Assembly: GCF_001194135.2 (NCBI RefSeq)
Contig: NC_068996.1
Span: 24,726,724 to 24,790,723, forward strand
From: Octopus bimaculoides
Taxonomy: Eukaryota
DNA length: 64,000 nt
Direction of reading: 5' to 3'
This document shows positions 63,233-63,473 of the stretch, piece after piece (the stretch's first letter is position 1; each line of letters opens with the position of its first letter). The notes beneath the pieces are model-generated. The model worked only from the letters and a program-made list of their open reading frames with translations. It made no database searches and was not told the origin of the DNA. The translations under genes and the position numbers were made by a program.

Positions 63233-63473
63233 GTAAGAACAGAAATAAATTTATTTCTCAAACGTGTGATAATGCTACAAATAGCGTGATCAGGATAAAT
63301 TATCCATTTATTGCAGAAAAATATGCTACTTGACGCGTAATCACAGAGACGTGAGTTCGAGTCTCATGGCTGGCCAGTAGCATATTTTTCTGCAATAAAT
63401 GGATAATTTATCCTGATCACGCTATTTGTAGCATTATCACACGTTTGAGAAATAAATTTATTTCTGTTCTTAC
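63233..63473. repeat. Perfect 98-bp inverted repeat with a 45-bp tRNA-like spacer
   Basis: 63233..63330 is the exact reverse complement of 63376..63473. The spacer contains TGA-CGCGTAA-TCA and GTGAG-TTCGAGT-CTCAT stem-loops. Confidence 0.95.

What the first reader, a model, noticed from the sequence alone, without database searches (positions are those of the whole stretch)
63233..63473. Perfect 98-bp palindrome whose loop is the 3' two-thirds of a tRNA-Thr(CGT)-like gene
Seen: the arms match 98/98, including several CpGs. The 45-nt loop folds as an anticodon arm remnant (TGA-CGCGTAA-TCA, anticodon CGT), a variable region, a canonical T-arm/B-box (GTGAG-TTCGAGT-CTCAT) and an acceptor 3' strand (GGCTGGC-C-A). 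The 5' acceptor strand, D-arm and A-box are absent, replaced by an inverted copy of the downstream flank. A TA dinucleotide lies just inside each end. Inference: either a SINE whose head was overwritten by fold-back copying of its own tail, or a TIR element/MITE that captured a tRNA head, giving a SINE-MITE hybrid. It ends ~112 nt upstream of the acceptor of the 41-nt MEN1 exon, so it would form a 98-bp dsRNA in pre-mRNA (an ADAR substrate; extensive editing is established in coleoids) close to a small exon.
Basis: partly seen in the sequence, partly recalled or inferred. Interest (0 to 1): 0.75.

Follow-up and report, generated by a model that had tools for sequence, protein, structure and literature searches.

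The report
Fold-back SINE insertion in MEN1 intron
The perfect 98-bp palindrome is real, but it is an ordinary dead copy of a tRNA-derived SINE that folded back on itself while being inserted into a MEN1 intron in this species only, and nothing yet shows that it affects the gene.

Summary
The arms 63233-63330 and 63376-63473 are 98/98 complementary around a 45-nt spacer.

The palindrome is not a whole element. Read depth shows that 63328-63530 belongs to a repeat family of roughly 1,000-2,500 copies. Normal copies carry a tRNA-like head where the left arm now sits.

Four runs from three closely related species have single-copy contigs that join 63224/63227 directly to 63536. That is an empty site lacking 308 bp. 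The inserted unit is therefore 63236-63530 (295 bp), flanked by a 13-bp target-site duplication, TGTTGTGAAAGTA / TGTTATGAAAGTA.

This means a 5'-truncated SINE and an inverted copy of 98 nt of its own body arrived in one retroposition event. A 3-nt microhomology lies at each junction. I favour snap-back of the first-strand cDNA on itself. An atypical twin priming is the main rival. The MITE/TIR reading and the TA duplication are rejected.

The copy lacks the A box, so it is dead on arrival. The 41-nt MEN1 exon is still spliced in. RNA editing could not be tested, because no pre-mRNA reads cover the intron.

This is a tidy natural example of a known process, of low to moderate interest.

The parts
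63223..63235 (+). Left copy of the 13-bp target-site duplication, TGTTGTGAAAGTA. Its last 3 nt (GTA) are also the first 3 nt of the left arm, giving the outer-junction microhomology.
   Evidence: Best direct repeat between the flanks. Empirical chance of such a repeat at both boundaries is 6.5e-4. Relatives carry a single copy at the empty site, with the G state in X16 and X33.
63233..63330 (-). Left arm: an inverted copy of SINE body positions 63376-63473. It occupies the place where normal copies have the tRNA head.
   Evidence: 98/98 complementary. The flank-to-arm junction is in single-copy-depth contigs of X1, X2 and X7. The arm-to-spacer junction is in X2, X10, X1, X22 and X23.
63328..63330 (.). 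Inner-junction microhomology ACT. It belongs both to the SINE head consensus (...GGTAAAAC-ACT-TGACGCG) and to the reverse complement of AGT at 63376-63378.
   Evidence: Head-bearing family copies align from 63328, not 63331 (loose ends). Sequence read.
63331..63375 (+). Spacer: the remnant of the tRNA-related head, roughly tRNA positions 29-73. It holds the anticodon-arm remnant, variable region, T arm with B box, and acceptor 3' strand. The A box and D arm are absent.
   Evidence: ARAGORN cloverleaf of the head consensus plus body.
63376..63473 (+). Right arm: the tRNA-unrelated SINE body in its normal orientation and position.
   Evidence: Depth is hundreds to thousands of times the single-copy level. 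Contigs of other copies run continuously across both 63375/63376 and 63473/63474.
63474..63530 (+). SINE 3' tail, outside the palindrome, ending ...TTTCATCGTAA with no poly(A).
   Evidence: High depth continues to about 63530. In other copies, unrelated flanks follow 63527-63530.
63531..63543 (+). Right copy of the target-site duplication, TGTTATGAAAGTA, with one G>A difference from the left copy.
63555..63559 (+). Putative branch point CTAAT, followed by a pyrimidine tract. It lies downstream of the insertion and is therefore left intact. This is an inference from the sequence only.
   Evidence: Sequence. The exon is still spliced.
63586..63626 (+). 41-nt MEN1 exon encoding ALLWLLHDMGYLSK. 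The insertion's right target-site duplication copy ends 42 nt upstream of it.
   Evidence: The mRNA contig X49 (2245 nt, depth 88.5) joins it to DSSEMASIQQ upstream and YPMALGNLG downstream. Menin exon 2 lies at 52147-52566, E = 2e-30 against PDB menin.

Best explanation
This is one retroposition event in the lineage of this species. RNA of a tRNA-derived SINE was reverse transcribed from its 3' end (63530) at a nicked target 42 nt upstream of a MEN1 3' splice site. First-strand cDNA synthesis stopped at the boundary between the D arm and the anticodon arm of the tRNA-like head (63328-63331). The cDNA 3' end (AGT) then folded back and paired with ACT on the cDNA itself, 45 nt behind. It copied 98 nt of its own strand, which is snap-back synthesis. 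That end joined the upstream target DNA through a 3-nt GTA/TAC microhomology. Filling of the staggered target cuts produced a 13-bp target-site duplication. The result is inverted 98 nt, then a 45-nt tRNA remnant, then direct 98 nt, then a 57-nt tail. The copy has a B box but no A box or 5' end, so it cannot be transcribed by Pol III and cannot found a family. Shown: single-event insertion, its boundaries, the target-site duplication, both microhomologies, family structure, lineage specificity. Inferred: snap-back as the step that made the inversion, and the dead-on-arrival status.
For: Empty site: single-copy contigs of X13, X14, X16 and X33 (three related species, flanks 1.3-3.4% diverged) join 63224/63227 directly to 63536. 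The listed joint, in X16 and X33, skips 308 nt with 6 nt fitting both sides. The 13-bp repeat lies exactly at the outer edge of the left arm and at the family's 3' end (chance 6.5e-4). Family: depth of 10^4-10^5 against 17-43 for unique sequence across 63233-63530. Other copies carry TTGCTGGGCAGTTTAGCTTAATGGTAAAAC before 63328, which completes a tRNA-like cloverleaf. The left arm carries the two states (63265T/63441A, 63278C/63428G) by which this copy differs from nearly all family members, so it was copied from this copy's own sequence. The inverted segment is nested entirely inside the direct segment. [quoted passage not shown] One other family copy, in contig X49 record 5, joins an inverted tail segment (63474-63525) directly to 63329. 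That shows a second inversion with nearly the same cDNA stop.
Against: The sequence alone cannot separate snap-back from twin priming; both predict the same final product and the same two microhomologies. A 3-nt microhomology is weak evidence by itself. The partner LINE and its enzyme are unknown. No long read spans the palindrome. Junction contigs are missing from two of six samples. Junction contigs of X1 and X10 and the reads of X22 and X23 differ from the window by one or a few bases. So either the junction is polymorphic or a second, similar junction exists elsewhere.
Confidence: 0.6

Rival explanations
1. Twin priming. The second target strand end (...GAAAGTA-3') annealed to UAC at 63471-63473 of the SINE RNA and primed a second, inverted cDNA back to 63376. 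The normal cDNA from the 3' end reached 63328. The two cDNA ends then paired through ACT/AGT.
For: It predicts the same target-site duplication, the same GTA microhomology at the outer junction and the same ACT at the inner junction. Twin priming is the standard explanation for 5'-inverted L1 and retrocopy insertions (PMC2912911; PMC12016303).
Against: In twin priming the inverted cDNA extends further 5' than the direct one, and overlaps are short: median 12 bp, quartiles 4-17. Here the inverted cDNA (63473 to 63376) lies wholly inside the direct one (63530 to 63328). The two priming and stop points are 143-146 nt apart, and the inversion adds no new 5' sequence. Both cDNAs would have had to copy the same stretch of RNA. 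5' inversions are very rare for short SINEs in humans: 1 of 5936 Alu and one in another survey.
Confidence: 0.2
2. Retroposition of an already palindromic source. A fold-back copy elsewhere was transcribed as part of a longer RNA and copied here in full, so the fold-back itself happened earlier at another locus.
For: Junction contigs have 1.5-1.7 times single-copy depth in X2 and X10. Junction-spanning reads and contigs in X22, X23, X1 and X10 differ slightly from the window.
Against: The excess depth is explained by the 2-3 head-bearing copies that share the exact spacer words (X1 81-nt contig, depth 41 against 16.8). No inverted joint that normal reverse-oriented copies cannot explain was shared by several reads in genomic raw reads, nor in contigs of the narrow junction window. 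The source would lack a Pol III promoter.
Confidence: 0.08
3. Post-insertion DNA-level fold-back, by replication template switching or break repair. A full-length SINE inserted first, and its head was later replaced by an inverted copy of its body.
For: Template switching in replication is known to create perfect hairpins de novo (bioRxiv 10.1101/2023.04.19.537475, listed). The ACT microhomology would fit.
Against: The inverted segment starts exactly at, and shares 3 nt with, the target-site duplication. The empty site removes the whole 308 bp cleanly. A later event would have had to delete the head to the base and stop at the insertion boundary.
Confidence: 0.05
4. A MITE or TIR DNA transposon (SINE-MITE hybrid) with 98-bp terminal inverted repeats and TA duplications.
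For: Only the palindromic shape and a TA inside each end.
Against: The right arm is not an element end, because the repeat continues to 63530. Other copies have a tRNA head, not a left arm. The duplication is 13 bp, not TA. There is no second copy in the window.
Confidence: 0.01
5. Assembly artefact: a chimeric or collapsed palindrome.
For: No long reads were available. No junction contig was found in X5 or X7.
Against: Both diagnostic junctions are seen in independent short-read data from several samples and years.
Confidence: 0.04

Closest known systems
cDNA snap-back 5' junctions of non-LTR retrotransposon insertions (described for R2-protein-mediated transgene insertion, PMC11371274)
   Same: Antisense insert sequence is joined to the upstream target. 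The cDNA 3' end primes on an internal position of the same cDNA before the 5' junction forms. The insert is 5'-truncated.
   Different: Here it is a natural germline insertion of a SINE at a non-specific genomic site, by an unknown LINE enzyme. The case is inferred from sequence, not observed experimentally.
Twin-priming 5' inversions of L1, processed pseudogenes and (rarely) Alu (PMC12016303, PMC2912911)
   Same: A 5'-inverted plus 3'-direct architecture inside one target-site duplication, with microhomologies at the junctions.
   Different: The inverted part is a nested duplicate of the direct part, with a 143-146 nt overlap against a median of 12 bp. It is not the next upstream segment of the RNA, and the product is a perfect palindrome.
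tRNA-derived SINEs (octopus OR1/OR2/OK-type families and SINE superfamilies cited in PMC4824008)
   Same: A family with a tRNA-like head carrying A- and B-box-like motifs, a unique body, no poly(A), about 10^3 dispersed copies, and a target-site duplication.
   Different: I could not match the family to a named one, because no sequences were available. The local copy lacks the head and cannot be a source gene.
Hairpins created by replication template switching (de novo miRNA precursors; bioRxiv 10.1101/2023.04.19.537475)
   Same: A perfect inverted duplication arises in one step in an intron, and it yields an RNA hairpin.
   Different: Here the switch is tied to reverse transcription and insertion, as the target-site duplication and empty site show. 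It is not tied to DNA replication of resident sequence. The stem is 98 bp, far longer than a miRNA precursor. The Rfam miRNA hit is below threshold (34.7 against 71 bits).

Membership tests
tRNA-derived SINE (family level) | tRNA-related 5' head with Pol III A and B boxes | tested here: met
   The consensus of sequence preceding 63328 in other copies is TTGCTGGGCAGTTTAGCTTAATGGTAAAAC, which contains a D arm and A-box-like TAGCTTAATGG. With the B-box-like GAGTTCGAGTCTC it folds as a degenerate tRNA-Thr(CGT), but only at a relaxed ARAGORN threshold.
tRNA-derived SINE (family level) | Many dispersed copies with different flanks | tested here: met
   Depth is 10^4-10^5 against 17-43 for unique sequence. 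Unrelated flanks follow the 3' end at 63527-63530 in other copies.
tRNA-derived SINE (this copy) | Insertion flanked by a target-site duplication, with an empty orthologous site | tested here: met
   13-bp duplication with 1 mismatch. Empty site in four runs of three related species.
tRNA-derived SINE (this copy) | Intact internal promoter (A box plus B box) | tested here: not met
   The local sequence starts at tRNA position 26-29. The A box and D arm are replaced by the inverted arm. This is a dead copy, not a source gene.
tRNA-derived SINE (family level) | 3' tail shared with a partner LINE | not tested
   No LINE with this tail is present in the window, and no genome-wide search tool was available.
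MITE / TIR DNA transposon | Terminal inverted repeats at the true element ends, shared by family copies | tested here: not met
   The right arm ends inside the repeat unit. Other copies lack the left arm.
MITE / TIR DNA transposon | Short fixed target-site duplication (TA) | tested here: not met
   The empty site defines a 13-bp duplication.
Twin-priming 5' inversion | One target-site duplication around an inverted 5' part and a direct 3' part, with junction microhomologies | tested here: met
Twin-priming 5' inversion | The inverted cDNA covers RNA upstream of the direct cDNA end, with only a short gap or overlap | tested here: not met
   Inverted 63473-63376 is nested within direct 63530-63328. 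Compare the median overlap of 12 bp.
cDNA snap-back junction | Antisense copy of the insert's own 3'-proximal sequence lying between the upstream target and the truncated 5' end | tested here: met
   Geometry. Definition from PMC11371274.
ADAR-edited intronic dsRNA | Clusters of A-to-G changes in RNA but not DNA over the stem | not testable with these tools
   Three RNA-seq runs sampled at about 6% give zero reads on the unique intron flanks. All reads on the repeat carry other copies' variants.
miRNA precursor (Rfam MIR7502) | Score at or above the family's gathering threshold | tested here: not met
   34.7 bits against 71. The match reflects only the long hairpin.

The most novel reading that the evidence does not exclude
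This species-specific 98-bp perfect hairpin lies in the intron, its right arm ending 112 nt upstream of a 41-nt MEN1 exon. It may be processed in pre-mRNA, by ADAR hyper-editing or dicing, and so change inclusion of that frame-shifting exon relative to sister species that lack the insertion. Separately, the repeated cDNA stop at 63328-63329 in at least two inverted copies may mark a hard stop for the LINE reverse transcriptase at the D-arm/anticodon-arm boundary of the tRNA-like head, caused by structure or base modification, which channels this family into snap-back products.
Probability: 0.1. Interest if true: 0.5.

Novelty: new member of a known kind. Interest (0 to 1): 0.27.

Why it matters
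The case is resolved at the nucleotide level, with an empty site, a target-site duplication and both junction microhomologies. It shows that SINE retroposition can create a long perfect palindrome in one step. Natural examples of 5'-inverted SINE copies are very rare in the best-studied system: 1 Alu in 5936. Such events place ready-made long dsRNA stems in introns, where they are raw material for editing, small-RNA production or genome instability. The presence/absence difference between sister species would allow a direct test of whether a 98-bp intronic hairpin next to a micro-exon matters. For annotation, the practical lesson is that the feature should be masked as a truncated, inverted SINE copy and not reported as a new MITE family.

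Tried and rejected
1. ARAGORN on the window and on the local element found no tRNA.
2. Rfam at a permissive E-value gave only sub-threshold hairpin matches: MIR7502 at 34.7 against 71 bits, plus bglG and others. I rejected these.
3. blastn of the arm, spacer and element against the 64-kb window found no second copy, so family structure had to come from read and contig data.
4. The 'opposite strands' joints 63322/63323/63330 to 63372 at first looked like other fold-back copies. They are simply normal copies in reverse orientation aligning to the left arm and running on into the reverse complement of the spacer. I rejected them as evidence.
5. 'Goes back 203' (63530 to 63328) in X16 and X33 has unknown intervening letters, so it may be two full copies in tandem. 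I did not use it.
6. A search for PacBio runs listed none.
7. RNA-seq for editing gave no intronic coverage.
8. The upstream MEN1 exon was searched by blastn and tblastn and was not found in the window, so exon skipping could not be scored.
9. A literature search for the SINE's sequence strings returned nothing. The original twin-priming paper is not held.
10. I first thought gene conversion was needed to explain the 98/98 identity. Flank divergence from the closest relative is only about 1.3%, so roughly one arm mismatch is expected and zero is unremarkable.

Full report
**Observation.** Between 62800 and 64000 there is exactly one inverted repeat. Its arms are 63233-63330 and 63376-63473, 98 nt each and 100% complementary, with 45 nt between them (rechecked). 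As RNA the region folds at -181.7 kcal/mol, against -60.3 +/- 5.2 for shuffled sequence (z = -23). The spacer reads TGACGCGTAATCACAGAGACGTGAGTTCGAGTCTCATGGCTGGCC and contains a T-arm/B-box-like hairpin. ARAGORN finds no tRNA in it, and Rfam gives only sub-threshold hairpin matches. No other copy of the arm or spacer lies in the 64-kb window.

**It is part of a larger, high-copy repeat.**
- I laid contigs of three genomic runs of the same species on 62900-63800. Depth rose from single-copy values (17-43) to 10^4-10^5 across 63233 to about 63530. That is on the order of 1,000-2,500 copies at 90% identity or better.
- Contigs from other copies run without a break across 63473/63474 and stop at 63527-63530, where unrelated flanks follow. 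The repeat unit therefore extends 57 nt beyond the right arm, and the end of the palindrome is not an element end.
- To the left, other copies stop matching at 63328. They continue with a consistent sequence, TTGCTGGGCAGTTTAGCTTAATGGTAAAAC (17-23 contigs per run).
- I joined that head to the body, with four positions (63350, 63376, 63380, 63382) set to family-consensus or common-variant letters. ARAGORN at a relaxed threshold then draws a 74-nt degenerate tRNA-Thr(CGT) cloverleaf.
The local copy keeps only about tRNA positions 26/29-73. An inverted copy of its own body sits where the acceptor 5' strand and the D arm with the A box should be.

**Boundaries and timing come from an empty site.**
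- Four runs labelled as three related species (flanks 1.3-3.4% different) each contain one contig at that run's single-copy depth. The contig covers the left flank up to 63224 or 63227 and continues directly at 63536. The record positions are contiguous. The listed joint, in X16 and X33, skips 308 nt with 6 nt fitting both sides.
- This matches the direct repeat I had found from the sequence alone: TGTTGTGAAAGTA at 63223-63235 and TGTTATGAAAGTA at 63531-63543. A repeat of this quality at both boundaries occurs at 6.5e-4 of random placements in this window.
- The inserted unit is 63236-63530 (295 bp). Together with one 13-bp repeat copy it makes 308 bp.
- The left copy of the repeat abuts the outer edge of the left arm and shares GTA with it. 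The right copy abuts the family's 3' end.
- The inverted segment, the truncated SINE and its tail therefore entered together, in this species' lineage, with a retroposon-type target-site duplication.
- This excludes a TA-duplicating TIR element. It also makes a later 'overwriting' of the head very unlikely.

**Is the palindrome real DNA?**
- The flank-to-left-arm junction is in contigs at single-copy depth from X1, X2 and X7, which come from different studies and years.
- Only a fold-back can produce the left-arm-to-spacer junction. It is in an exact 64-nt contig of X2 (63301-63364). It is also in contigs of X10 and X1 at 88-99% identity, and in one raw read each of X22 and X23.
- X5 and X7 have no junction contig. 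The tool's description says contigs drop rare variants. Against repeat words of thousand-fold depth, this branch is one.
- No long-read run could be listed.
- I take the structure as real. The exact arm length rests on the assembly, and there are signs of small sequence variation at the junction among individuals.

**Mechanism.**
- Two 3-nt microhomologies mark the junctions. ACT at 63328-63330 belongs both to the SINE head consensus and to the reverse complement of AGT at 63376-63378. GTA at 63233-63235 belongs both to the target and to the reverse complement of TAC at 63471-63473.
- The left arm carries the states at which this copy differs from nearly all family members (63265/63441 and 63278/63428). 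It was therefore copied from this copy's own sequence, not from another element.
- Favoured reading: first-strand cDNA synthesis primed at the target ran from 63530 to about 63328. The cDNA 3' end then snapped back onto the cDNA 45 nt behind and copied 98 nt of it. That end joined the upstream target by microhomology.
- This junction class is documented for a non-LTR retrotransposon protein in human cells. There the cDNA 3' end primes synthesis complementary to the cDNA before the 5' junction forms, which gives target junctions to antisense insert sequence (PMC11371274).
- Main rival: twin priming yields the same product and the same microhomologies. In twin priming, however, the inverted cDNA covers RNA upstream of the direct cDNA's end, and overlaps are short (median 12 bp, quartiles 4-17; PMC12016303). 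Here the inverted part is nested wholly inside the direct part and adds no upstream sequence.
- 5' inversions of short SINEs are also very rare in humans: 1 of 5936 germline Alu and one in another survey.
- My weights are about 0.6 for snap-back and 0.2 for twin priming. The remainder is split among retroposition of an already palindromic source, post-insertion DNA fold-back, MITE and artefact.
- One other family copy, in contig X49 record 5 with supporting reads in X46 and X47, joins an inverted tail segment (63474-63525) directly to 63329. This is a second inversion with almost the same cDNA stop. It hints that the boundary between the D arm and the anticodon arm is a preferred stop, but two cases are anecdotal.

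**Context and consequence.**
- The host gene is MEN1. The stretch 52147-52566 matches PDB menin at E = 2e-30.
- The 41-nt exon 63586-63626 encodes ALLWLLHDMGYLSK. In a 2245-nt mRNA contig of this species it is spliced between DSSEMASIQQ and YPMALGNLG.
- The insertion point is only 42 nt upstream of the acceptor. A CTAAT branch-point-like motif (63555-63559) and the pyrimidine tract lie downstream of it and are intact. That is an inference from the sequence.
- The exon is included despite the hairpin.
- Whether the stem is edited is unknown. Three RNA-seq runs, each sampled at about 6%, gave zero reads on the unique intron flanks. The reads on the repeat carry other copies' variants.
- Exon skipping could not be scored. 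The upstream exon in the mRNA is not in the window, and the downstream exon lies beyond it.
- The copy has a B box but no A box or 5' end. By established knowledge of Pol III type 2 promoters it should be transcriptionally dead, so it cannot seed a palindromic subfamily.

**Comparison and verdict.** The feature is a member of a tRNA-derived SINE family that I could not name. It carries a snap-back-type, or atypical twin-priming-type, 5' inversion. It is not a MITE, and it is not categorically new. It is a clean and uncommon natural example of a known side-reaction of target-primed reverse transcription. It also gives a convenient presence/absence contrast for testing what a 98-bp intronic hairpin does. 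Interest is low to moderate.

Noticed in passing
window 63706-63798: Fragment of a second, far more abundant tRNA-SINE-like family, with depth up to 10^5-10^6 against 17-60 for unique sequence. Other copies continue with GTTCTGAGTTCAAATTCCGCCGAGGTCGAC on the left and GTACCAGTTGAGCACTGGGGTCGATGTAAT on the right. It is present at the orthologous site in the related species too.
   Followed up: partly
window 63613-63674: A GTT-rich, low-complexity stretch just after the 41-nt exon's donor site, also at very high depth in all species. Probably a microsatellite-like repeat.
   Followed up: no
window 63880-64000: A long (ATT)n microsatellite that runs to the end of the window.
   Followed up: no
window 52567-63585; N run 60535-60634: No sequence matching the MEN1 exons expected between exon 2 (52147-52566) and the 41-nt exon was found. 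The 30 nt upstream of the exon in the mRNA contig (TGGACAGTTCAGAAATGGCTTCTATACAAC) are absent from the window. These exons may lie in the 100-N assembly gap or be misplaced in the assembly.
   Followed up: partly
other loci of the SINE family (window coordinates 63329/63474, 63328/63488, 63383/63500, 63468/63512): Contigs and RNA reads from elsewhere in the genome show other inverted joints within this SINE. One is well resolved: the reverse complement of 63474-63525 joined directly to 63329, in X49 record 5. Another is an abundantly expressed 63468/63512 joint with 26-53 reads per run.
   Followed up: partly
window 63305-63356: The junction is not uniform across individuals. It is exact in X2. 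It carries one or a few differences in X10, X1, X22 and X23. One X24 read pair matches 63305-63324 and 63337-63356 but not the 12 nt between. X5 and X7 have no junction contig. This could be polymorphism, hairpin-related sequencing error or a second similar locus.
   Followed up: partly
window 63223-63227 versus relatives: At the empty site, X13 and X14 lack one TGT unit of the TGTTGTG motif, while X16 and X33 have it. This is a small slippage difference inside the target-site sequence.
   Followed up: no
window 63448-63465 and 63397-63409: The SINE body itself contains short perfect palindromes, AGAAATAAATTTATTTCT and GGATAATTTATCC. They are therefore present twice in the big hairpin.
   Followed up: no
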